Source: Fimbriosthenelais zetlandica
Taxonomy: Eukaryota
Length of the DNA stretch: 64,000 nucleotides
Reading direction: 5' to 3'
Assembly: GCA_977030845.1 (NCBI GenBank)
Contig: OZ365115.1
Span: 24,986,001 to 25,050,000 of the forward strand
Shown: piece after piece, positions 1,162 to 61,772 of the stretch
Layout of the letters: each line of letters opens with the position of its first letter
Numbering within the stretch: the first letter of the stretch is position 1
Program-made: the position numbers and the translations under genes
The notes under the pieces: model-generated
What the model was told of the DNA's origin: nothing
What the model saw: only the letters and a program-made list of their open reading frames with translations
Databases searched by the model: none

Positions 1162-1399
1162 CCCCTGTTGTACAAGAAAATCGTCGATGGCGAGGGAACG
1201 GCGAGGGTACCCTCGCGGAGCGATTGCATTGACCAAGAAATGTTTTTGAGAAAACAATGCTTGGACAATGCAATAACAAGCAGTTGTCCAAGCACTTCTT
1301 TCAAATGCTTCTTTCAAAAGCATCACTTCAACAATGCAATCGCTCGACGAGTGTACCCTCGCTGATCCCTCGCCATCGACAATATTCTTGTACAACACC
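1162..1399. mobile_element. MITE family A, symmetric (R/R-arm) copy
   Basis: About 65-bp inverted arms TGTTGTACAAGAAAATCGTCGATGGCGAGGG.. / ..CCCTCGCCATCGACAATATTCTTGTACAACA, and a central TGCTTGGACAA..TTGTCCAAGCA hairpin; 7 related copies in the window. Confidence 0.9.
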
Positions 1400-3779: not shown

Positions 3780-3810
3780 GTCATCTCACGTGACATGACG
3801 TCATAGCGTC
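3780..3810. promoter_or_regulatory. Adjacent E-box and CRE palindromes
   Basis: TCACGTGA 3786-3793 is followed by TGACGTCA 3796-3803. Confidence 0.35.
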
Positions 3811-3952
3811 TGGGGTGTCTAGCAAGACTACCAGACGACAGGTAGTGTGAGTCATTTGTTTTTCCCGTGTGCCCCGCCAGCGACCTGATTATTAGCTAGG
3901 TCCCTCCATTGTTGAAGGCATGTTGCCCTGTATTGATTTATACAGGCCCTAT

Positions 3953-4360
3953 ATATGTGACGTGTTTTCACGAAATGAGTCTAAAGTCGCATAGTGCCAT
4001 TTGGAGCTATAGGCCTGAAAGCGTTGTAAACAAACCACTTGTTTCTCTCAGCATTTTCGCACTAAAAGGATACGATGTTTTTACTATTTTCATGACTGAA
4101 ATTGAGAAAAGTTCATCTTTGTGCGTATTGTCCCTTCAGCATTGCTTCCGGTTTGAATTGCCTGAAATGGGTATTTTCTCTAGTTCCTGCAGTCACTGCT
4201 TTTATTCTTTGAAATTGTATTAAAAACGTAAGTATTTTTACATGTCCTTGTACTATACATCACTGAAAAGGTCATAATCTGCTCTATACGAATCAGCCTT
4301 AACTCAAAATCCATTATTGCGACTTTAGACTCATTTCATGAAAACGCAATCATCACATAT
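3953..4360. mobile_element. Non-autonomous TIR element with ATATGTGA..TCACATAT termini
   Basis: TTTTCACGAAATGAGTCTAAAGTCGCA (3965-3991) is the reverse complement of TGCGACTTTAGACTCATTTCATGAAAA (4318-4344) with 1 mismatch; outer ATATGTGA/TCACATAT. Confidence 0.8.
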
Positions 4361-5222: not shown

Positions 5223-6739
5223 GGGGGCACCTGATAGCAAGAGCTGAAGGTACCAAGAAGTACCAAAATGTAGTACCAGAGACACTTTTAAAGGGCATAT
5301 TTTATGTTCTTATGGGCCATATAATTAATTAGGTTTCTAAGCACAAGAGCAGCCATATATATTTCTTCAGAGAGACCCTATGATGTATTAGCCTACCGGT
5401 ACATATAATATATTAATCTATTTTAATATTATACCGATCTAATTCTTATATATATCGTATCCACTTATATCGGTCCCCAAGACTTGAAAATGAAAATCAG
5501 TTTTAAGGTCCTTTAAGTCATGGCATTGTGTTCCCGAATCCTAAAATGTCACTAACAATTCTAGTAATCTACAACTTGTAGATAACCACCTAACCTCCCC
5601 CCCCCCCCCGCCAACCTCCCCTCGAGAGACAAACTGCAGGTCTCAATTATTTTCTAAAGACTTAATCAATTCAATCATGTTTGGTATTTCTCATCCCGAA
5701 ACCATATACAATTAAATAGTTTAAATGGTTAATATATCAAAATTAATTACGAAAATCTTTCCCAAATCTTATGATTACCATAATGAATGTTAATAAATAA
5801 AAAAAGGAAATGTGTTGAGCCTAATTTGGCTCCGTTTATGATTGCTATGACACATTAATTCGTGCATTCAAAATGACAGATTAAGAAATTATTTTTCCTC
5901 TTTTTTCCCCTCAAGAGGTCATCCTTAGAAATTATTTTTTTGATTTTTTTTAATGAATTAGACCGTTGTGGGCAGCCATTGTGGGCCCACTTCCATTATG
6001 CTCCACCCAAATTATCTATCATCTATTTTTCAGCGAGACTGTCCAGACAATGTCCCGCTACCTGTGAGTCAGAGGCAGGGAAAACCACAGAAATGAGAGA
6101 GAAAAACCACAAAATTAATCTCTCACACACCTTCCCTGAGGGCCTAAGCCCCCACCTAGCCCCCTATAGGGGCCCCACCCCTTCCTCAAACCCCACCCCC
6201 AAAACCGGCAGATATAGGAGTTGGGGGATTGTTGGTCGGGGATAGCAATGAATATTGAGAAATTTGAAATCTAAAGCAAAGTGGTGCTTCTTCATGAATT
6301 TGTCCTCGATGATGAAGATAGGGATAATTATTATTATGTTTTTATGACGGCTAAATACATATGGTCAAAGGATTACAAAGACAACAATGACTGCAAAGAG
6401 TCAAGAGAGAAAGTCCCCTTGTAAGTTATAGGATAATTGTAGCTAGATCGAGCAGAAACAGGGTATGTCCCTTGATCCCCTCAGTCCCCTGATGTCTTAG
6501 ATATGAGGAGGAGGTCATTTCAACTGTGCAGAATTCCCCTTGATTTCAAAGAAAAGGGCACTAAATGTGATACAAAAATCATTCAAAATGGATTTTTCAA
6601 ATAGAGAACGAGAATATAGGTGTCAACTTTGGTTCTCAGTGCCCCCCACTCCCTTTCCGGAAACCCCACCCACCCCCGCCCCTTCCCCCATTAGCCCCAC
6701 CCCATCTTGCGAAAGGAAACTCAAATATGTCCACTGATT

Positions 6740-6900
6740 CCCACCCTCATCACGGCCCGCCCCATCATCTGACCCCTCTGACGTCACAAAGAGCCTGAGT
6801 ATGACCTTCAGCACCCCTCAATGACCTACAGATGATGAGGGTATTAGCCGCCGGTAGGGGGCGCTGTTTGTCATTGTTGTCAGGGGGCGGGGTGTCCCCA
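6740..6900. promoter_or_regulatory. GC-rich island with CRE, GC boxes and a CTCF-like motif
   Basis: TGACGTCA 6779-6786; CCGGTAGGGGGCGC 6851-6864 (1 mismatch to CCASYAGRKGGCRS); GGGGCGGGG and two TGACCT sites. Confidence 0.4.
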
Positions 6901-7257
6901 TGGGGACAGGAAAACCTGCAACAAGATCCCCCGCCAAGAGCTGTTGAATTTTATCTTTATTTTCTTTTAAAGTTTTGGTTTCTTTTTTTTCCATTTGTGG
7001 TTTGTTTCTTTGTCTGTGACGAGTTGGGTTGTCTCGTTCAGAGCTTCGTGCTACTGTCAAAATAATACGATCTAATGTTTTCAATTTTTTTTAATGCGGC
7101 AGGCCACTTTTGAAAAATAATTCAGAGAATCACACATTTTCATGAATAAGCAATGTTTAAAAAGTATTAATCAAGTTTAATTCTCACATGGGTAAAAATT
7201 GTATGTTTGTGTTGTAATGTTTATTAATTAAGCAAATATTACTATGGTCTGATGATC

Positions 7258-7436
7258 GGGTAGCTCCACTGGGTTTCATTTGTGTTGCGATTTTGTTGCG
7301 GCAAGCATCGTGGGTAACCTTTGTATATAGCACACTACTCCCAATTAGAGCATATATGCAACCCTCACACATAGCAAGCCCCTGCTAGTGCAGTTACACT
7401 TGCGGCATTTGTGGCAGAAAATCCCAGTGGAATCCC
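7258..7436. mobile_element. MITE family D (GGGTAGCTCCACTG termini)
   Basis: GGGTAGCTCCACTGGG at the left and CCCAGTGGAATCCC at the right; internal GCAAGCCCCTGCTAGTGCAGTTACA is shared with copies at 49.3, 56.05 and 63.66 kb. Confidence 0.75.
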
Positions 7437-7645
7437 AAAGGAATCATTCATAATTATAAATTCATGAAAATCTGTTCTATCTAAACAACACTTTTTCATG
7501 AGCCATGCATTTAAGCTAGGAGATAATAACACATTTTTATCACAAAACACATCCCCTGACATTGTTATTGACAGCAGAGTCCCCTAAGCGGAGAGTGTGT
7601 TTGCCATGATAGGGTGTCATAATTTATATTACCCCCGACCTCCAT

Positions 7646-7693
7646 GGGAAATCCTTGGCCATAACCATGGGTTTAACGTTTCGGGGATTCCCC
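7646..7693. promoter_or_regulatory. Pair of NF-kB-like sites
   Basis: GGGAAATCC 7646-7654 and GGGGATTCCCC 7683-7693. Confidence 0.3.
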
Positions 7694-8519
7694 TTCTACT
7701 CTACAGAATCACCCAAAATTATTTGTACACTTCTACATTTTTTAATTAACAACTTTCAATGCTACAATAGCAGCATGTATCCACCGCAAATATGAATTTC
7801 AGTGCATCATATTAAATCAAGGACTGTATGAATGGGTTCTTCTTTTTCCGTTCTGAAAAAAAGGAATTGAAGCCCCCCCCCCCCCCCCCCCCTCTCCTCC
7901 CCTATAACATCTACTTAGGTCCTAATGCCCATTTAAGGGCCTTAACTTGGAGAGCCAGAGCTTATAAATATTATGCATTTGTCCTATGACATTGCATGGT
8001 TGCTTTATAACAGCCTTAAAATAACATTTTTTTAAATTATACAATATATTTTGGGAGATCCTGCATGTAAGTAGGTCTGCGCCAGTTACTCGAAATGATC
8101 AGACGCTCTTTCTACTCTCCCTTACCGGATTGAATCCATAACATTCCAATTTGATTGGCCCCGACTGGGACAGAATTATGGCCACTCTGGGGTTGTAGAG
8201 AGATTCAAAAAGACATTTAAAAAGACCTTGAAAACGCCCTCAGAATGCTAAACTAGTACTAAAAGAACGACTCGTATATGACTTGAATAAATACAGCGGT
8301 AGTCTGTGAAACATGTATGCAGGACTTTATGCAAATGATGAATATTTTTACCAGACAATATTGCCAAACCTGTAACTAAAATGGGAAATGAATGAGTTTT
8401 ACCTTTATAGTTGAGAAATGAGACTGATTAAGCTCACCTTCCTCCTTGCCCGGTGATCGCAGAACTGATCACAGAAGTTCTGTTTTAGTCCAGTAGTTCA
8501 TTTGTGTGTGTGGCACACA

Positions 8520-26144: not shown

Positions 26145-26371
26145 NNNNNNNNNNNNNNNNNNNNNNNNNNNNNNNNNNNNNNNNNNNNNNNNNNNNNNNN
26201 NNNNNNNNNNNNNNNNNNNNNNNNNNNNNNNNNNNNNNNNNNNNNNNNNNNNNNNNNNNNNNNNNNNNNNNNNNNNNNNNNNNNNNNNNNNNNNNNNNNN
26301 NNNNNNNNNNNNNNNNNNNNNNNNNNNNNNNNNNNNNNNNNNNNNNNNNNNNNNNNNNNNNNNNNNNNNNN
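26145..26371. other. Assembly gap (227 N) flanked on the left by a (TGAA/TGGA)n microsatellite
   Basis: Run of N; the ORFs containing X are artefacts. Confidence 0.99.
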
Positions 26372-30503: not shown

Positions 30504-30726
30504 CCCCCCGTTGTATAAGGAACCTCGTCAATGGCGAGGGTCGGCAAGGGCAACCTCGTCGAGCGTTTGCTTTGTTAAAGAACTGTTTTCTTGAAAATAT
30601 TGCTTGGAAAATTGCTTGTTATTGCACTGTCCAAGCACTTCTTTCTCAAAAATGTTGCTTGTACAATACATTCGCTCGACGAGGATACCCTCACCGACCC
30701 TCGCCAATGACGATTTTCTTGTACAA
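30504..30726 (+). mobile_element. MITE family A, asymmetric (L/R) copy
   Basis: GTTGTATAAGGAACCTCGTCAATGGCGAGGG.. left arm and ..CCCTCGCCAATGACGATTTTCTTGTACAA right arm. Confidence 0.9.
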
Positions 30727-33405: not shown

Positions 33406-33596
33406 TTGTACAAGTAAATCGTCAATGACGAGGGTCGGCGATGGTACCCTCGTCCAACCATTGTATTGTACAAGCAATATATTATTTGAGAAAACAGTGC
33501 TTGGACAATGCGATAATAAACAATAACCATGCACTTTTTCAAGAAAACAGTACTTGAACAAAGCAAACGCTCGCCACTGGCGAGGTTCCTTGTGCA
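33406..33596 (-). mobile_element. MITE family A, asymmetric copy with a deletion in the L arm
   Basis: R arm first (TTGTACAAGTAAATCGTCAATGACGAGGG), core AGTGCTTGGACAA, shortened L arm ..AAAGCAAACGCTCGCCACTGGCGAGGTTCCTTGTGCA. Confidence 0.85.
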
Positions 33597-34032: not shown

Positions 34033-34372
34033 CAGGCCCGGATTGAGGGGGGGGGGGGGGTACTCTATATAGGCGATTATCCAAGCGATAGCTGCGCGAA
34101 ACTATATTTCTAGTCGCACCCCATGCTTGTAATTTTAACAGTCCTTTAAACCTAGATAAGGCTAACCACTGACAAAATTACAAGTATTGGGTGTGACTAG
34201 AAATATAGTTTCGTGCAGCTATCGCTTGGAGAATCGCCTATATGGGCGCCCGGCAATAGGTTAAAACCTTAATCCTAGGGGTAAACGCTAACCAATATAA
34301 TAATGTAGGGTAGGTGTTAACCCTAACCCTAACCTGTCACCCCCCTTGTGGAAAAACCTGGATCCGCCCCTG
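34033..34372. mobile_element. Poly-G-bearing element with CAGG(G/C)CGGAT..ATCCGCCCCTG termini, hosting a nested family C MITE
   Basis: Left CAGGCCCGGATTGAGGGGG.., right ..CCTGGATCCGCCCCTG. Confidence 0.6.
34070..34240. mobile_element. MITE family C, intact 171-bp copy with TA target-site duplication
   Basis: About 67-bp TIRs (TAGGCGATTATCCAAGCGATAGCTGCGCGAAACTATATTTCTAG..) with about 5 mismatches, flanked by TA on both sides (Tc1/mariner-type target). Confidence 0.95.
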
Positions 34373-38029: not shown

Positions 38030-38660
38030 GGCATGCTTCTGACGTCACACTAACTGCGTCATAGGGACGCTTGATGACACGCGTCCGGGGGATCTCTGCT
38101 TCTGTGGGGATTCCCTCTGCCTCTCTCTCTCTATGACAGAATTGAACCTGGAAGGGACACTGCCACTGCTGCTGCTGCCGCTGTTGCTTTTCTTGGGAAG
38201 GAGGTGGTGGGAGGGAATCCCTCCTCTTTCCATGCTCATTCAGGCACACTGAATTAAAGCGGGTGTTCATGTGGGTGCTCAGCACTGCAAATCAGATGAT
38301 TTCTGCTCTTTGGAACTGTATTTCTTCAAAGCAATGTACATTAATGTATTTCCCCCCTTTTTCAAGGAGTTCCAATAATGAGAAAGCGTCCCCCTTTTCA
38401 TGGATGGCTCTACCGTTAATACCTTGGCACTGGATAACATAAAATGCTGAAAATGAGACATAACTTCTGGGTATCCACGTCGGCACAGGTTGTCCCAGTC
38501 CTGGCCTCACTCCAGTGTCCTGCTGCCTTTCAGAGGAGGGGAGATCTATGCAAGGGAGATTCCATTGGGGTCTCCCTCCCAGGTGTTAGGAGGGAACTGG
38601 GGAACACCCTCCCACTCACTAAGTGAAGGGAACCCACAAAGGAATGTCCAGGGGGTCTCC
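38030..38660. promoter_or_regulatory. CRE plus NF-kB site cluster
   Basis: TGACGTCA 38040 and TGCGTCA nearby; GGGRNNYYCC matches at 38106, 38554, 38567 and 38651; near-match at 38213. Confidence 0.45.
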
Positions 38661-40534: not shown

Positions 40535-40582
40535 ACAAGAATGACGTAGGATGATAATTATGACGTCAGACATGCGTCATGG
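40535..40582. promoter_or_regulatory. Triple CRE/ATF-like cluster
   Basis: TGACGTAG 40542, TGACGTCA 40561 and TGCGTCA 40573. Confidence 0.4.
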
Positions 40583-40779
40583 AAGGGCAGGGTGGAGGGT
40601 ACTTGAGGGTGGGAGTGTGGGGAGGAAGGGGAGGGTGGAAAGGGAATGGGGGAGGGTGTAAGGATGGCTGAAGATGGGTAATTGTCGGAGGTACCCTTTC
40701 CAAGCCCCTGGAAGGTGGGAAATATAGCGATTTCTGTGTGGCTTTAGACTGCTTTCTCTATATGTATCTCCTGCTTATA

Positions 40780-49300: not shown

Positions 49301-49425
49301 TGTTGCAAGTAAATTGCAGTCAAAACCGTGACACAAAATTAAGGGCAAAGTTAGTTGCAACGCAGTCAGAATTGTTGAAAGTGATAAACATCAACTTGTC
49401 TATCGTAATAGTTGGTTCAACCCTA

Positions 49426-49630
49426 AAGCCTGTACTCCACTGCTGCGATTTTGCTTGCGACACCACAGCGACAAAGGTGATGCTTGTGTGGCAATAAAAT
49501 GTATAAAATTTGGTTGAAGTGTTCAAGGCCTTAAGGCCATCTTTCACTGGTACATTTTTCTTTGCAACACAAGCACCACCTTTGTCGCAATAGTGTCGCA
49601 AGCATAATCGAAACACTGGAGTCCCGGCTT
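49426..49630. mobile_element. MITE family B, full copy with TA target-site duplication
   Basis: TA|AAGCCTGTACTCCACTGCTGCGATTTTGCTTGCGACAC .. GTGTCGCAAGCATAATCGAAACACTGGAGTCCCGGCTT|TA; central AAGGCCTTAAGGCC. Confidence 0.92.
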
Positions 49631-49729
49631 TAGGCAGGGACTAAACTGTCTTGTGTCTGAATGTCACAAGCAGAAAATTGCAATGTGAAATCGCAGTAAT
49701 CGCTCCGCTAAAAAACAAGTTACCCCAAC

Positions 49730-49895: not shown

Positions 49896-51205
49896 TACCT
49901 ACTAAGACAGAATTATAGAAGATTATGAAATAGGTACTGAATCATCAACCATCCTTTGGGAAAAAATCATTGTTTGCAAATAAATATTGACCCCAAGACA
50001 CGAAATCTAAGTTGACGCCCCACTTTTTTTCCTTCTTTTTGTGAAGGAAATCTAACTTGACACGTATAAGGCTTACAAAGTTACAGCGAATTTAATTGGG
50101 AAGTTAAATTATTTATAATTAGAAATATGATAATATGGCAATAATTAACAATACGGTTGGTATTTGTGCTTCGAATTAGCGGCAAATTAGAATTAATTAA
50201 ACGCTCATGTACTTCCATTAATACGTTGCAATTAAGGAAAGTTCTGATCTTTACGTATTATGGTAATGTTTATATAGTTAAATTGGAAACAGTGCTTTTT
50301 AAAAATACGTTATAAATAATAATTATTTATAACCTAAGAACTGTCATCATGAAAATATCATTACCCAAGTCAACATATTAAGTATAAACGATTCAGTCAT
50401 AGAATATTATTATCAATTATTAAAGACAACTGAAAACAGTTTAACACAAAATAATAATAGTTCTGATCACCGAAGACAATTAACATGAAAGATGTTATTT
50501 ATAGAATATAATAATTAATTAGGAATCATGATAAGTAAATCAATTATAAGTAATTAACATAATTATTTAACCTTGTGTTAAGGTGAGTTCAAGTCCATTA
50601 TGTACAATCAATCACCAATTCTCAGAATTGAGAAATGTTCCAAATATAACATTCAAAATCAACAATAATTTAATCAAACCAAGTGTATTGACTTTCAAAA
50701 CCCAAATAAATAGCATGAATAGAACCCACCAGTGCTTGGAATGCGTCCATATTGTTGTAGTACCCACGTGGTTGACTTCTTAGCCTTGCCTTCTTTCTAT
50801 CCATCCTCCGCGCATCCCCTCTCTCCCTCTCTCCACGTGGACCCCGATATCGTAATCCAAAGCCTTGGGCTGCCTGCTACGACTTCTGCAGAGCCTATCC
50901 TCTCTTGATGCTAGGAAAAGCCAGCTATGTGACGGAGATTTCCCTATCCTGAAATCTATGAACCTATGAACGGTTTGCGTCATTTGAACTCGATTCCTTT
51001 GAGTTTGAGTTGAAGGTAAACATTGCTGTGTTGTGAAATTGCAAAGTACTATAGAATGTGTACTTGGATGGGATAGATTCCAAATTGTGATGGCTTGTAA
51101 ATGCATTATAGCAATGGACAATGAGGCAATTGAAATAATTGCAGCAATACTAACAGTGTAGTTCTAATCTCCCAATGTGGTGAGGCCTATAAGGACATGA
51201 TCCAT

Positions 51206-51322
51206 ATAGTGAACACCCCATCGATGTCCATTCCTAAGGACTTGAGGTGTTGTTCCTTCTGACTATGGAATATCTCCATAATAGTGAACGTTTTCCCCTT
51301 TAGTTGTTGAAGTGTTCACTAT
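51206..51322. mobile_element. Small hairpin element (ATAGTGAACAC..GTGTTCACTAT), related to motifs near 28.8 kb
   Basis: 11-bp perfect inverted ends; GTGTTCACTAT also occurs at 28779. Confidence 0.45.
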
Positions 51323-51409
51323 GTTTAGGTTTTACTGCAATGTGTTGTTGTGAATTGAAGGCAAGTCCTGTGGAAGTTTGGGGAAGACATCCCATGTAGG
51401 CCTATGTTG

Positions 51410-52220
51410 TGGAAGGAATTCCCCTCCTCAATGTGTTGCCAGCTTAAGTTGTAGAAGCAAAGAGGGGGAATCCAAAGCCAAGGTAAACAGTGCCATGAGG
51501 ATAGGTAAGGGGGAATCCCCTGCTTCTCCGGCTGAAGGACGGCGAATAGGGAATCCCCGACACGTCCTCTCTCTCCAAGGCACAGGCACAGACAGACCCC
51601 GGTCTCTCATACAAGTATTTCTTTATACCCCCGGTCGCCAATCATAAAATTGGCCACATTTTAAATCAGGGGGTGGTTCGTTGGGCGGGGGATCGGCTGC
51701 TGGCTGCCTGGCTGCAGGCAGGCAGCAAGCAAGGGGATGTCCTCGCCAGGAACGTAAATCCCCCCAGATTGACGTCATTCTATGGGGTTTCCCTCATGGA
51801 AACCTCGTTTTATTTCCATATATGGCAGTGGGGGTGCATACAAAGTGGCTGGTTGCTAGGCGTTGCTAAGGACCGCGGTAATCACATTGGTTCACACTGG
51901 GATCAATAACGCTACAGAATCAGGTGGGGGTCGGGGGTGTCCTCTGACGTCACAGACGCTCTGACGTCAAACCTTAAGTTTTTTATAGCTCCCTATCAGC
52001 AAGTAAAAGCGGCGCAGTGACGTCAATTATTTGTTGCTATTTTGAGCAGCTCTCGTAGGGAATTCCCTCTTGGGGTTGCCCTCTGTGGCGCGAATTATGA
52101 GGTGCTCACAGTGGCTTCGCCTGTGCATGGTTCTCTCTTCATTTTCCCATGACTATGTAGAAGGGAGACCTTTGAATTAATTGATATCAAGTAAGGCTCA
52201 AAATGGAGAGGAATTCCCTG
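51410..52220 (-). promoter_or_regulatory. Candidate inducible promoter/enhancer: TATA, CCAAT x2, GC box, 4 CRE, CArG, X-box-like and 5 NF-kB sites
   Basis: Minus-strand TATAAAG 51621-51627; CCAAT 51638 and ATTGG 51649; GGGCGGGG 51683; TGACGTCA 51770, 51945, 51962 and 52018; CCATATATGG 51816; GTTGCTA(G/A)G 51852 and 51862; kB sites at 51415, 51510, 51549, 51784 and 52058. Confidence 0.6.
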
Positions 52221-53169
52221 TAAGGTTTCAAGCTTCATTCTCTCCCATCACAGCTTTAATTTAAGCTCAAATCTGAGTCGGAATTCCATTGAATTGTATC
52301 ACAATATTCCACATTATTATGTGCACATCCGAACACCCCATTTAGACAATTAAATTGCCATAAAACTGCATTAAAAGTTCCACAACCCCAAAGAAAAACA
52401 TCACAGTAGGAATAATATTCCAAGATTTTGCATTGACCTATAAATTTCAATAAAGCTAAATCCTTGGATATAAAACAACTCCAGCATTGCAAATAATCCA
52501 ATGCTAAATCCAATAATTTCACTATTTGAATTCACTATTTAAATCCAATGGAAAGGAACAAAGTTGTCTGGACGGAAGTCTACACGGGAGTGTGGTAGTT
52601 GTGAGGGGCGGAGAGGGTTATTATAGCAGAGGGGTATAGATGAGCGAAGATGCCCCCTCCCCCCTCCCCCATCTAATCTCCAAGTGGGAGGGCAGGTGTA
52701 GGGGGGTGGGGGTGGAGGGAGGGGCAGACAGGAAGGGGTAGTTTAAGAGGCGGGGTGATTGGGAATGGGGTGGGAGAAGGGGGTGGGGGTTTTGGAAGCA
52801 GGTGGGGCATGGAATACTATTATATAGGGCATTATGATTTGAAGTCCCAAGCTGCACGAAATGTGAATTTTCTCTCAGACAAATAATTTATAATAATTTG
52901 AAATTTCCTTTCGCAGTGCTATAAACGTCAAACACACTTTTAATTATTTTGCTTTTGAGCTAGAACTGTTCAAAGGACTTTGCAAGCTAGAAATATGAAG
53001 TTTACCTCACTTTAAGGTGAATTACTAAACAAAAGATTTATTTAATAGCATGAATAGACGTATAATAATAAATCATATAAAATGTCAAATTAGAGGTATA
53101 TATCATGTCTTTTCCTGTGACAATTGCACATTGCAGATGGAAAAGACATATCTATTGGATGAAAATTAT

Positions 53170-53677: not shown

Positions 53678-53878
53678 GGAATACACTAATCCGATTCCCC
53701 AATCCGTCGCCAACTCCCATTTCTAATGACATTCAGTAATTGAAATGTTGTCAATTAGCTGATTAGTCTTACCTAGGTGTAACGGACAGTTAAAATTACA
53801 AGCATTTGGTGTGAATAGAAATATAGTTTCGGACAGCTTTCGGATGGAGCCGGATAGAGAATTGGATTAATGTGTTCC
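53678..53878. mobile_element. MITE family C' (family C core with CACTAATCCGATTC termini)
   Basis: GGAATACACTAATCCGATTC / GAATTGGATTAATGTGTTCC ends; core TTACCTAGGTGTAACGGACAGTTAAAATTACAAGCAT..AGAAATATAGTTTCG is shared with family C. Confidence 0.85.
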
Positions 53879-56212: not shown

Positions 56213-56430
56213 CATGCCCACGCACTGACCCGATTCTCCAATCCGTCACCATGGGATACCCCATTTCTAATGACATCCAACTATTGAAATTGTGTCAGTG
56301 GTTAGCTTTACCTAGGTGTAAAAGACAGTTACAATTAGAAGCATTGGGTGTCACTATAGAAGTACAATATCGGACAGCTATCATTATATATGGAGCCGGA
56401 TAGAGAATCGGATTAGTGTGTGGGCACCTT
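56213..56430. mobile_element. MITE family C'
   Basis: TGCCCACGCACTGACCCGATTCTC / GAGAATCGGATTAGTGTGTGGGCACC ends; collinear with 53678-53878. Confidence 0.88.
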
Positions 56431-57071: not shown

Positions 57072-57288
57072 CCCCCTCTTGTACAAGGAACCTCGCCAAT
57101 GGCGAGGATCGGCGAGGGCAACCTCGTAAGGCGTTTGCTTTGTTAAAATACGTTTTTTTCTTGAAAAAAAGTGCTTGGATAATTGCCTGTTTTTCCATTG
57201 TCCACGCATTAAATATTGTTTGTACAATACAATCGCTCAACGAAGGTACCCTCGCCGACCCTCGCCATGGCGATTTTCTTGTACAACA
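57072..57288 (+). mobile_element. MITE family A, asymmetric copy
   Basis: CTTGTACAAGGAACCTCGCCAATGGCGAGG.. / ..CCCTCGCCGACCCTCGCCATGGCGATTTTCTTGTACAACA. Confidence 0.9.
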
Positions 57289-60857: not shown

Positions 60858-61099
60858 AAGCCGGGACTCCACTGCCTCGATTTTGCTTGCGACTACTGCA
60901 ACAAATATGATCTTTGTGTGGGAATGAAAAATGTACTAGTTGAGGACGGCCTTAAGAAAAAAGTGCTTGGACAAAGAAATAACAAGCAATTGTCCAAGCA
61001 CTTTTTTTTTCAAGAAAACAGTACTTGAAGAAAGCAAACGCTCGACGAGACTGCCCTCGCCGACCTTCGCCATTGGCGAGATTCCCTGTACAACAGGGG
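60858..61099. mobile_element. Chimeric MITE: family B half (60858-60955) fused to family A core and L arm (60956-61099)
   Basis: TA|AAGCCGGGACTCCACTGCCTCGATTTTGCTTGCGAC..TGAGGACGGCCTTAAG runs directly into AAAAAAGTGCTTGGACAA..CTGTACAACAGGGG. Confidence 0.85.
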
Positions 61100-61194
61100 A
61101 ATATGATAATTAATGTTATCTCCTTATATAGAGCTTCCCTCAGGTATAGGATATCTACTGCGTGTTATAGTATTTAATCTTCTGTGTGTATCTC

Positions 61195-61285
61195 ATCTAC
61201 TGTGTTAATCTACTGTGTGCATCTACTGTGTGCATCTACTGTGTTAATCTACTGTGTGCATCTACTGTGTGCATCTACTGTGTGC
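61195..61285. repeat. 13-bp minisatellite ATCTACTGTGT(TA/GC) x7
   Basis: Units at 61195, 61208, 61221, 61234, 61247, 61260 and 61273; unit ends follow the pattern TA, GC, GC, TA, GC, GC, GC. Confidence 0.95.
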
Positions 61286-61350
61286 TGGACAGATCACAAA
61301 AACGGTTGATGCAATTATGACCACTACGAATTTAACTGAGTATACCAGGC

Positions 61351-61518
61351 GTTGTACAATAAAATCGTCGATGGCGAGGGATCGGCGAGGGTGCATTGTT
61401 GAAGTGCTGCTTTTTTGTCCAAGCACTGTTTTCTCAAAAACATTGCTTGGTGAATGCAATCTCTCCGCGAGGGTACCCTCGCCGATCCCTCGCCATCGAC
61501 GATTTTATTGTACAACAG
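61351..61518. mobile_element. MITE family A, symmetric (R/R) copy with deletion
   Basis: GTTGTACAATAAAATCGTCGATGGCGAGGGATCGGCGAGGGT / ACCCTCGCCGATCCCTCGCCATCGACGATTTTATTGTACAAC: a perfect 42-bp inverted pair. Confidence 0.92.
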
Positions 61519-61534
61519 TGGGATACTCTATTAT

Positions 61535-61772
61535 GCCCCTGTTGTACAAGGAACCTCGCCAATTGCGAGGGTCCGCGAGGGCAACCTGCATGCTCGAGCG
61601 TTTGCTTTGTTCAAACTTGTACTGTTTGTTTTAAAAGGTGTTTGGATTAGTTGTTAATATTGCTTTGTCCAAGCACTGTTTTCACAAAAATATAGCTTGT
61701 ACAATACAATCGCTCGACGAGGGTACCCTCGCCGATCCTTCGCCATCGACGATTTTATCGTACAACAGGGGC
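61535..61772 (+). mobile_element. MITE family A, asymmetric copy
   Basis: GCCCCTGTTGTACAAGGAACCTCGCC.. / ..CATCGACGATTTTATCGTACAACAGGGGC. Confidence 0.92.

What the first reader, a model, noticed from the sequence alone, without database searches (positions are those of the whole stretch)
51410..52220. Promoter-like immediate-early/immune module with TATA, CCAAT, 4 CREs, SRE, X-box and 5 NF-kB sites, but no ORF downstream
Seen: on the minus strand the order from distal to proximal is kB (52058), CRE x3 (52018, 51962, 51945), RFX-like half sites (51852-51873), CArG (51816), kB (51784), CRE (51770), GC box, CCAAT x2 and TATAAAG (51627-51621). Three more kB sites follow just downstream (51549, 51510, 51415). 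Known: SRE + CRE + TATA is the c-fos/egr architecture, and multiple kB sites mark NF-kB targets such as IkB and cytokines. Inference: a TSS near 51590 firing leftward. No coding exon is evident, so this could be an unannotated inducible lncRNA, a gene with a long first intron, or a strong enhancer.
Basis: partly seen in the sequence, partly recalled or inferred. Interest (0 to 1): 0.7.

Follow-up and report, generated by a model that had tools for sequence, protein, structure and literature searches.

The report
Dense CRE/NF-kB regulatory module, no gene
A 900-base stretch of non-coding animal DNA holds far more binding sites for stress- and immune-responsive gene switches (CREB/ATF, NF-kB/Rel) than chance allows. 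They sit next to a textbook TATA promoter core, so it is probably a real inducible switch, but no transcript or target gene could be shown.

Summary
Window 51400-52300 contains:
- 4 perfect TGACGTCA palindromes (0.004 expected);
- 5 strict and 8 loose Rel/NF-kB-type sites (about 0.2 expected for each of the two patterns);
- one consensus CArG box;
- five GTTGCY half-sites;

It is the densest such bin in the window, is single-copy within the window, and was partly built by small local duplications.

The promoter grammar is real. However:
- no coding exon, no good splice donor for about 830 nt, no Inr and no known RNA family lies downstream;
- four kB sites lie downstream of the proposed start;
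- no sequencing run could be listed, so no start site or inducibility was tested;
- "SRE" and "X-box" are overstated, because there is no adjacent ETS site and no SXY order.

Two smaller kB/CRE clusters (about 6.8-7.7 kb and 38.0-38.7 kb) and a 15-fold window-wide excess of CREs suggest a signal-responsive regulatory landscape whose gene lies outside the window.

Best reading: an inducible enhancer-promoter unit firing leftward, or nearly as likely a distal enhancer. A transposon- or virus-derived origin is not supported but cannot be excluded. This is an ordinary kind of element. The scan's notes hold no look-alike on other DNA.

The parts
51400..52300 (-). Whole module: GC-richer island (47-53% GC against 33-39% in the flanks) holding all the sites below
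   Evidence: it is the top-scoring 900-bp bin of the window
51415..51424 (.). Rel/NF-kB-type site GGAATTCCCC
51464..51473 (.). Looser Rel-type site GGGGGAATCC
51509..51520 (.). Rel/NF-kB-type palindrome GGGGGAATCCCC. It shares a 23-nt, 74%-identical flank with the 51549 site, which points to a local duplication
   Evidence: (D7)
51549..51558 (.). Rel/NF-kB-type site GGGAATCCCC
51621..51627 (-). TATAAAG box. The predicted start lies about 30 nt downstream (about 51600-51590), and there is no Inr there
51638..51653 (.). Inverted CCAAT pair (CCAAT-N6-ATTGG), read as NF-Y-type boxes
51683..51688 (.). GC box GGGCGG
51754..51804 (.). Compact composite of four parts: a one-mismatch kB-like site (51754-51765), a CRE (51770-51777), a kB site GGGGTTTCCC (51784-51793), and an inverted GGTTTCC/GGAAACC pair. 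The CRE sits inside a 34-nt imperfect palindrome (51757-51790)
   Evidence: (I1)
51816..51825 (.). Consensus CArG box CCATATATGG (SRF-type). No ETS core lies beside it
51852..51871 (.). Two direct GTTGCTARG half-sites (RFX-like). The module holds five GTTGCY against 0.6 expected
51886..51890 (-). Third CCAAT box, read on the minus strand
51945..51969 (.). Pair of perfect CREs with starts 17 nt apart. Both read TGACGTCAGAG on the minus strand, which points to a 17-nt tandem duplication
   Evidence: (D4)
51980..51987 (-). Second minus-strand TATA-like box TATAAAAA, 31 nt downstream of the CRE at 52018-52025
52018..52025 (.). Perfect CRE
52058..52067 (.). Perfect palindromic Rel/NF-kB site GGGAATTCCC
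52210..52217 (.). GGAATTCC core. Its flank is 79% identical over 19 nt to that of the 52059 site
   Evidence: (D9)
52280..52287 (.). GGAATTCC core

Best explanation
The stretch is a signal-inducible RNA polymerase II enhancer-promoter unit.

Proposed working, all of it inferred rather than shown:
- Four palindromic CREs would hold CREB/ATF-type bZIP dimers.
- Eight to nine Rel-homology sites would take up NF-kB/Rel dimers once an IkB-type inhibitor is removed.
- One CArG box would hold SRF.
- All of these recruit CBP/p300-type co-activators and act together on a core made of a GC box, a CCAAT pair and TATAAAG on the minus strand.
- Transcription would then start leftward near 51600-51590.
- The product would be non-coding or a long untranslated first exon, since no ORF or splice donor follows for about 830 nt. 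The unit may also act at a distance on a gene outside the window.

Shown here: the sites, their excess over chance, their order and the uniqueness of the core series.
Inferred: factor binding, the start site, inducibility and the target.
For: - Site excess: 4 CREs against 0.004 expected, and 5 strict kB and 7 GGRAWTCC sites against about 0.2 each. No shuffle of 5000 reached these counts.
- It is the top bin of the window, and all four GGAATTCC of the window lie here.
- The ordered GC-box/CCAAT/TATAAA series is found once in 64 kb, at this spot and on the minus strand, against 0.12 expected.
- A full CRE lies 143 nt upstream of TATAAAG and another lies 31 nt upstream of a second TATA. CRE plus TATA is the configuration that responds preferentially to cAMP and activity signals in c-fos, Nr4a1 and Ptgs2 (PMC5740062).
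- No AATAAA or ATTAAA occurs for 923 nt leftward, whereas three occur within 150 nt on the other side. This agrees with leftward elongation but is weak evidence.
- The region is single-copy in the window, with no transposon protein remnants and no viral match.
- Two further kB/CRE clusters and a window-wide excess of CRE (12 against 0.7) and kB-like sites (21 against 5.5) point to a regulated landscape.
Against: - No transcript evidence of any kind; no run was listed.
- No Inr at the predicted start.
- No donor of 5.5 bits or more for 829 nt, and only ORFs of 3-31 aa in the first 490 nt.
- Four kB sites lie downstream of the TATA, so the TATA sits inside the cluster rather than at its edge.
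- CpG observed/expected (0.41-0.65) is no higher than the window mean of 0.62, so there is no CpG-island signature.
- No cross-species or genome-wide copy-number test was possible.
Confidence: 0.42

Rival explanations
1. It is a distal or intronic enhancer with no productive promoter of its own. The same factors bind, but the output is activation of a gene outside the window, possibly together with the smaller kB/CRE clusters at 38.0-38.7 kb and 6.8-7.7 kb. The TATA gives at most short enhancer RNAs.
For: - kB sites flank the TATA on both sides, from 51415 to 52287.
- No exon, donor or ORF lies downstream.
- The window as a whole lacks convincing coding sequence.
- There are three separate kB clusters, and CRE is 15-fold over-represented across the window.
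Against: The complete GC-box/CCAAT/TATAAAG series in canonical order and spacing is unique in the window and unexpected by chance. A pure enhancer does not need it.
Confidence: 0.33
2. It is a relic promoter of a mobile element or virus, such as a solo LTR or a pseudo-LTR of a Penelope-like element. It would carry its own strong enhancer and TATA, now without its genes, and be either neutral or co-opted.
For: - A promoter with nothing downstream is what a solo LTR looks like.
- Short internal duplications resemble viral enhancer repeats.
- The 25-nt double-CRE core matches 24 of 25 letters in a repeated element of about 80 nt on three contigs of one metagenome assembly. One of those contigs (L003) also carries a GIY-YIG ORF in the same orientation, whose stop lies about 900 nt upstream of the repeat.
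- MITE-like repeats lie at 49422-49634 and 53684-53875.
Against: - Homology to those contigs stops at the 25-mer.
- The TG...CA plus target-duplication search gave 3 six-mer cases against 1 expected, none convincing.
- There is no second copy in 64 kb, no transposon protein remnant and no viral-contig match.
- No long ORF lies within 10 kb.
Confidence: 0.13
3. It is a neutral sequence. The motif density would come from local duplication of short GC-rich palindromes, with no regulatory role.
For: - Some sites share flanks and clearly arose by duplication (D4, D7, D9).
- All the main motifs are palindromes.
Against: - Duplication explains at most 3-4 of the 13 or so sites.
- CpG-containing CREs persist intact in a CpG-depleted genome (window observed/expected 0.62).
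- The probabilities stay tiny even at the window's own inflated motif rates.
- A unique core-promoter series coincides with the cluster.
Confidence: 0.1

Closest known systems
Human cytomegalovirus major immediate-early enhancer/promoter
   Same: Both are a compound module of about 550-600 bp upstream of a TATA box. Both mix several CREs, several NF-kB sites and an SRF site, with part of the site set generated by short repeats. The CMV element has five CREs in 19-bp repeats, NF-kB sites in the enhancer repeats, and SRF/Elk-1 in the distal enhancer (PMC7690695).
   Different: - There is no sequence similarity and no viral genes nearby.
- There is no match in viral contigs.
- The repeats here are only 1.5-2 copies.
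- Here kB sites also lie downstream of the TATA.
It is a functional analogue, not a relative.
CRE/TATA immediate-early promoters (c-fos, Nr4a1, Ptgs2, Egr1 type)
   Same: Full palindromic CREs lie within 200 nt of a TATA box, together with a consensus CArG box (PMC5740062 for the CRE/TATA class).
   Different: - Those promoters are followed at once by a coding gene; here nothing follows.
- The c-fos and Egr1 SREs pair the CArG with an ETS site, which is absent here.
- Eight Rel sites is far more than in those promoters.
NF-kB feedback and cytokine-type promoters and the interferon-beta enhanceosome (from general knowledge, not tested here)
   Same: Both have homotypic kB clusters. The tight CRE-kB composite at 51754-51804 recalls ATF-2/c-Jun sitting next to NF-kB.
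   Different: No clear IRF sites, no downstream gene, and a much larger span than the 55-bp enhanceosome.
MHC class I/II SXY module (RFX + CREB + NF-Y)
   Same: It contains the nonamer CCTAGCAAC (minus strand), CCAAT boxes and CREs within 250 nt.
   Different: - The S-X1-X2-Y order and spacing are not present.
- No CRE abuts the RFX-like half-site.
- The half-sites are direct repeats.
- The Y box is 14 nt away and on the other side.
Retroviral or retrotransposon LTR promoters (HIV-1 kB+Sp1+TATA; HTLV-1 triple CRE repeats; from general knowledge)
   Same: An enhancer with kB or CRE repeats lies next to a TATA. A solo copy would have no gene downstream.
   Different: No defined ends, no target-site duplication, no second copy and no element-derived protein remnants were found.

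Membership tests
CRE/TATA inducible promoter | Full TGACGTCA site within about 200 nt upstream of a TATA box on the same strand | tested here: met
   The CRE at 51770-51777 lies 143 nt upstream of TATAAAG (51627). The CRE at 52018-52025 lies 31 nt upstream of TATAAAAA (51987)..
CRE/TATA inducible promoter | Capped transcription start about 30 nt downstream of the TATA | not testable with these tools
   No sequencing run was listed. The sequence shows no Inr at 51605-51590.
CRE/TATA inducible promoter | A transcribed gene (exon with donor, ORF or known RNA) downstream | tested here: not met
   The first donor of 5.5 bits or more is 829 nt downstream. Only ORFs of 3-31 aa start in the first 490 nt; the next, 108 aa from an ATG at 51106, shows no coding features. 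Rfam gives nothing..
NF-kB/Rel-responsive element | Two or more GGGRNWYYCC-type sites in excess of chance | tested here: met
   5 strict and 8 loose sites in 870 nt, against about 0.2 expected for each of the two patterns. The largest count per 900 bp in any shuffled window was 3..
NF-kB/Rel-responsive element | Occupancy by, and response to, a Rel factor | not testable with these tools
   Needs ChIP, a reporter assay or stimulation data.
Serum response element (SRF + ternary complex factor) | CC(A/T)6GG box | tested here: met
   CCATATATGG at 51816. It is not significant alone (P 0.12).
Serum response element (SRF + ternary complex factor) | ETS core (C/A)GGA(A/T) suited to a TCF immediately beside the CArG | tested here: not met
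   Only GGAAAT overlaps the box, and there is no CCGGAAGT in the module. The SRE array at 2640-2675 of the same window does have ACTTCC beside each of its two CArG boxes, overlapping the CC.
MHC-type SXY module | S-X1(RFX)-X2(CRE)-Y(CCAAT) in fixed order and spacing | tested here: not met
   There are two direct half-sites at 51852-51871, no CRE abuts them, and ATTGG lies 14 nt away.
Herpesvirus immediate-early enhancer | Lies in a viral genome next to immediate-early genes, with multiple 17-21-bp repeat families | tested here: not met
   No long ORFs within 10 kb. No viral-contig match. Only 2-copy local repeats.
Solo LTR / transposon-derived promoter | Defined TG...CA ends with a target-site duplication | tested here: inconclusive
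   3 six-mer duplications against 1 expected. The best case (51140-52491, AATAAT) has only a 4-nt terminal inverted repeat.
Solo LTR / transposon-derived promoter | Multiple dispersed copies in the genome | not testable with these tools
   There is no second copy in the 64-kb window. The notes index holds no look-alike, but a blank there means nothing. The whole assembly is not available.
CpG-island promoter | CpG observed/expected clearly above the genomic background | tested here: not met
   0.41-0.65 across the module against 0.62 for the window.

The most novel reading that the evidence does not exclude
This is a cellular counterpart of a viral-type immediate-early enhancer-promoter. It would be a single compound switch that integrates Rel, CREB/ATF and SRF signalling to fire an unannotated, ORF-less immediate-early transcript (an inducible lncRNA or long enhancer RNA). 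It would be the strongest of three Rel/CRE clusters that together make a 64-kb gene-free stretch an NF-kB- and cAMP-responsive regulatory landscape in what its CpG content suggests is a non-vertebrate animal.
Probability: 0.2. Interest if true: 0.5.

Novelty: new member of a known kind. Interest (0 to 1): 0.3.

Why it matters
If the module is active, it marks an inducible element that responds to immune, stress or activity signals in unannotated DNA. It would also give a compact natural test case of how CREB/ATF, Rel and SRF inputs are wired together outside the well-studied vertebrate genes. Its target, either a non-coding transcript or a distant gene, would be worth finding. The element class itself is well known, so the value lies in annotation and as a candidate for reporter work, not in a new principle.

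Tried and rejected
1. RNA and DNA read evidence: both run searches listed nothing, so read laying could not be used.
2. Coding exons: ORF lists, a composition-scored stop-to-stop ORF scan and a 3-base periodicity scan found nothing convincing in the window.
3. Known RNA genes: Rfam at gathering threshold, Rfam at permissive threshold, and tRNA search all gave nothing. The weak miRNA-like hits at 52650-52727 are a low-complexity C-run/G-run hairpin no more stable than shuffles (z -0.3 and -0.9).
4. Repeat or transposon origin:
   - Self-BLAST found no second copy.
   - The TG...CA/TSD scan was unconvincing.
   - tblastn with the transposon-like ORFs of the metagenome contigs found nothing in the window.
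5. Viral origin: two viral-contig pattern scans were negative.
6. Orthologues:
   - One metagenome scan with the CRE-kB composite was negative.
   - The second scan, with the double-CRE 25-mer, gave four contigs that match only over 25-26 nt. One match lies inside a hamartin coding sequence and three lie in a repeated element, on one contig downstream of a GIY-YIG ORF. None is an orthologue.
7. Plus-strand promoter reading: no GC/CCAAT/TATA series on that strand. The nearest TATA-like boxes (52439, 52468) have no sites within 150 nt (the nearest is at 52280), and three poly(A) hexamers lie around them at 52349-52454.
8. The bacterial promoter/terminator scan is irrelevant to an animal genome.

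Full report
**What is there**

- Perfect TGACGTCA palindromes start at 51770, 51945, 51962 and 52018.
- Rel/NF-kB-type decamers lie at 51415, 51509-51520, 51549, 51784 and 52058.
- A consensus CArG box, CCATATATGG, lies at 51816.
- Two direct GTTGCTARG half-sites lie at 51852-51871.
- GGGCGG lies at 51683, and an inverted CCAAT pair at 51638 and 51649.
- TATAAAG lies on the minus strand at 51627-51621.

- Three looser Rel-type sites at 51464-51473, 52210 and 52280.
- A one-mismatch Rel-type site at 51754-51765. Together with the CRE at 51770 and the kB site at 51784 it forms a compact kB-CRE-kB composite inside a 34-nt imperfect palindrome (I1).
- A third CCAAT at 51890-51886.
- A second minus-strand TATAAAAA at 51987-51980, 31 nt downstream of the CRE at 52018.

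**Is it more than chance?**

Yes.
- In 5000 dinucleotide-preserving shuffles of 51400-52300, the expected counts are 0.004 CRE, 0.23 strict kB and 0.20 GGRAWTCC. The observed counts are 4, 5 and 7, and no shuffle reached them.
- The window's own motif rates are themselves inflated. Even so, a 900-bp bin with 4 or more CREs has P about 3e-5, and one with 8 or more kB-like sites has P about 1e-9.
- All four GGAATTCC octamers of the 64-kb window fall inside this stretch.
- It is the top-scoring bin of the window.
- GTTGCY half-sites are also enriched: 5 against 0.6 expected, P 4e-4.
- The single CArG box is not significant alone (P 0.12).
- Some sites share flanks: 17-nt CRE units at 51945 and 51962, 23-nt units at 51498 and 51536, and 19-nt units at 52059 and 52210. 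Part of the array therefore grew by small local duplications, as enhancers often do. This explains only a minority of the sites.

**Promoter or enhancer?**

- I scanned both strands of the window for a GC box followed by a CCAAT-type box followed by TATAAA within canonical distances.
- CRE plus TATA is the configuration that responds preferentially to cAMP and activity signals in c-fos, Nr4a1 and Ptgs2 (PMC5740062). Here one CRE lies 143 nt and another 31 nt upstream of a TATA box.
- Leftward of the proposed start there is no AATAAA or ATTAAA for 923 nt. On the other side of the module three occur within 150 nt. This agrees with leftward elongation but is not significant.

- The predicted start (about 51600-51590) has no Inr.
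- The first splice donor scoring 5.5 bits or more is 829 nt downstream.
- The ORFs that start in the first 490 nt are 3-31 aa, and the 108-aa ORF from the ATG at 51106 shows no coding features.
- Four Rel sites lie at about +39 to +182, so the TATA sits inside the cluster rather than at its edge.
- CpG observed/expected is not raised above the window mean.

No sequencing run could be listed for this stretch. Start sites and inducibility therefore remain untested.

**Surroundings**

- The window has no convincing coding exon on either strand. It also has no Rfam family and no tRNA.
- A C-run/G-run hairpin at 52650-52727 that drew weak miRNA-like hits folds no better than shuffles.
- The module is single-copy within the window. 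MITE-like palindromic repeats flank it at a distance, at 49422-49634 and 53684-53875.
- The window as a whole holds 12 perfect CREs against about 0.7 expected, and 21 Rel-like sites against 5.5 expected.
- The Rel-like sites form three clusters: 6889-7683, 38106-38651 and this one. CREs lie beside the first two clusters at 6779 and 38040.
- Another note of this scan (s1-214146) marks an SRE array at 2535-2730. I read it and saw two CArG boxes, each with ACTTCC overlapping its 5' CC.
- The stretch therefore looks like the regulatory landscape of a signal-responsive gene that lies outside the window. This module is its largest element.

**Mobile-element or viral origin**

- A search for TG...CA ends with target-site duplications gave three six-mer cases against one expected, none convincing.
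- Two pattern scans of viral contigs were negative.
- A metagenome scan with the CRE-kB composite was negative.
- A metagenome scan with the 25-nt double-CRE core found four contigs. In all four, the similarity ends at 25-26 nt.
- One of those matches lies inside a hamartin coding sequence.
- The other three lie in a repeated element of about 80 nt in one metagenome assembly. One of those contigs also carries a GIY-YIG ORF of the kind found in Penelope-like retroelements.
- tblastn with those ORFs finds nothing in the window.
- The recurrence of the 25-mer is unexplained. It keeps a mobile-element origin of the CRE pair alive, but it does not show such an origin for the module.

**How it most likely works**

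The following is inferred from established knowledge of these factor families. CREB/ATF dimers sit on the four CREs and are switched on by cAMP, calcium or stress kinases. Rel dimers enter the nucleus after immune or stress signalling and fill the eight to nine kB sites. SRF sits on the CArG box. All of them recruit CBP/p300-type co-activators, which act on the NF-Y/Sp/TBP core to give rapid, synergistic, immediate-early-type transcription.

My odds are:
- 0.42 for an enhancer-promoter unit firing leftward, with a non-coding product or a long first exon;
- 0.33 for a distal enhancer without a productive promoter;
- 0.13 for a mobile-element or viral promoter relic;
- 0.10 for neutral sequence.

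**Comparison with known systems**

- The closest functional analogue is the human cytomegalovirus major immediate-early enhancer. It has five CREs in 19-bp repeats, NF-kB sites and SRF/Elk-1 sites upstream of a TATA box (PMC7690695). There is no sequence or genomic relation to it.
- The module shares the CRE/TATA/CArG grammar of c-fos-type promoters but lacks their gene and the ETS partner of a true SRE.
- It does not meet the SXY order of MHC promoters.
- It is a new member of a well-known kind of element.

**Verdict**

Interest is modest (0.3). The scan's notes hold no look-alike on other DNA, although a blank there carries no weight.

Noticed in passing
window 38040-38651: A second, smaller cluster. 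It has a perfect CRE plus a TGCGTCA half-site at 38040-38062 and five Rel-like sites (38106, 38213, 38554, 38567, 38651). It may be a companion enhancer of the same landscape.
   Followed up: partly
window 6650-7700: A third cluster. It has GC-rich boxes, a CRE at 6779 with the same CCTCTGACGTCACA flank as the CRE at 51945, and Rel-like sites at 6889, 7429, 7647 and 7683. The 7676-7692 site matches 51549-51565 at 16 of 17 letters in inverted orientation.
   Followed up: partly
window 3780-4230: A promoter-like stretch on the plus strand. It has a CACGTG box and a CRE at 3790-3803, a TATATAT at about 3950, and a GTAAGT donor-like site near 4228. It is a possible non-coding first exon of a rightward gene. 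The string TGACGTCATAGCGTCTG at 3796 repeats the CRE-plus-spacer of the module at 16 of 17 letters.
   Followed up: no
whole window: Palindromic octamers are strongly over-represented: CCACGTGG 9 against 0.33 expected, TGACGTCA 12 against 0.8, TAGGCCTA 9 by the script's tally (8 sites printed) against 0.8. Two CCACGTGG lie at 50764 and 50833, about 800 nt left of the module, and one TAGGCCTA lies at 51397 at its edge.
   Followed up: partly
window 40540-40590: Three CRE-type sites within 50 nt (TGACGTAG, TGACGTCA, TGCGTCA), forming another small CREB-type cluster.
   Followed up: no
window 1166-1397, 30511-30726, 33406-33573, 57072-57288, 60952-61771; also 34067-34243, 49422-49634, 53684-53875 / 56223-56421: Several families of short palindromic, MITE-like repeats, 70-93% identical between copies. 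None overlaps the module.
   Followed up: partly
L001 1-130, L003 1-130, L004 900-1000 (metagenome contigs JAAUYI01...): A shared repeat of about 80 nt carries the double CRE. In L001 the 9-nt spacer between the two CREs is inverted relative to L003 and L004. L003 also carries a GIY-YIG endonuclease ORF (Penelope-like element type), whose stop lies about 900 nt upstream of the repeat in the same orientation.
   Followed up: partly
L002 1487-1512: A 26-nt exact match to the module's double CRE lies inside the coding sequence of a hamartin (TSC1-like) ORF of 1181 aa on a JGI metagenome contig. This is probably coincidence helped by a 17-nt tandem duplication, but it is unexplained.
   Followed up: partly
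window 52650-52727: A C-run/G-run inverted repeat that draws weak miRNA-family hits (E 1-5). Its folding energy is no better than shuffles, so it is low-complexity sequence and not a credible hairpin gene.
   Followed up: yes
window 26145-26371: A run of 227 N (assembly gap or mask). It was left untouched.
   Followed up: no
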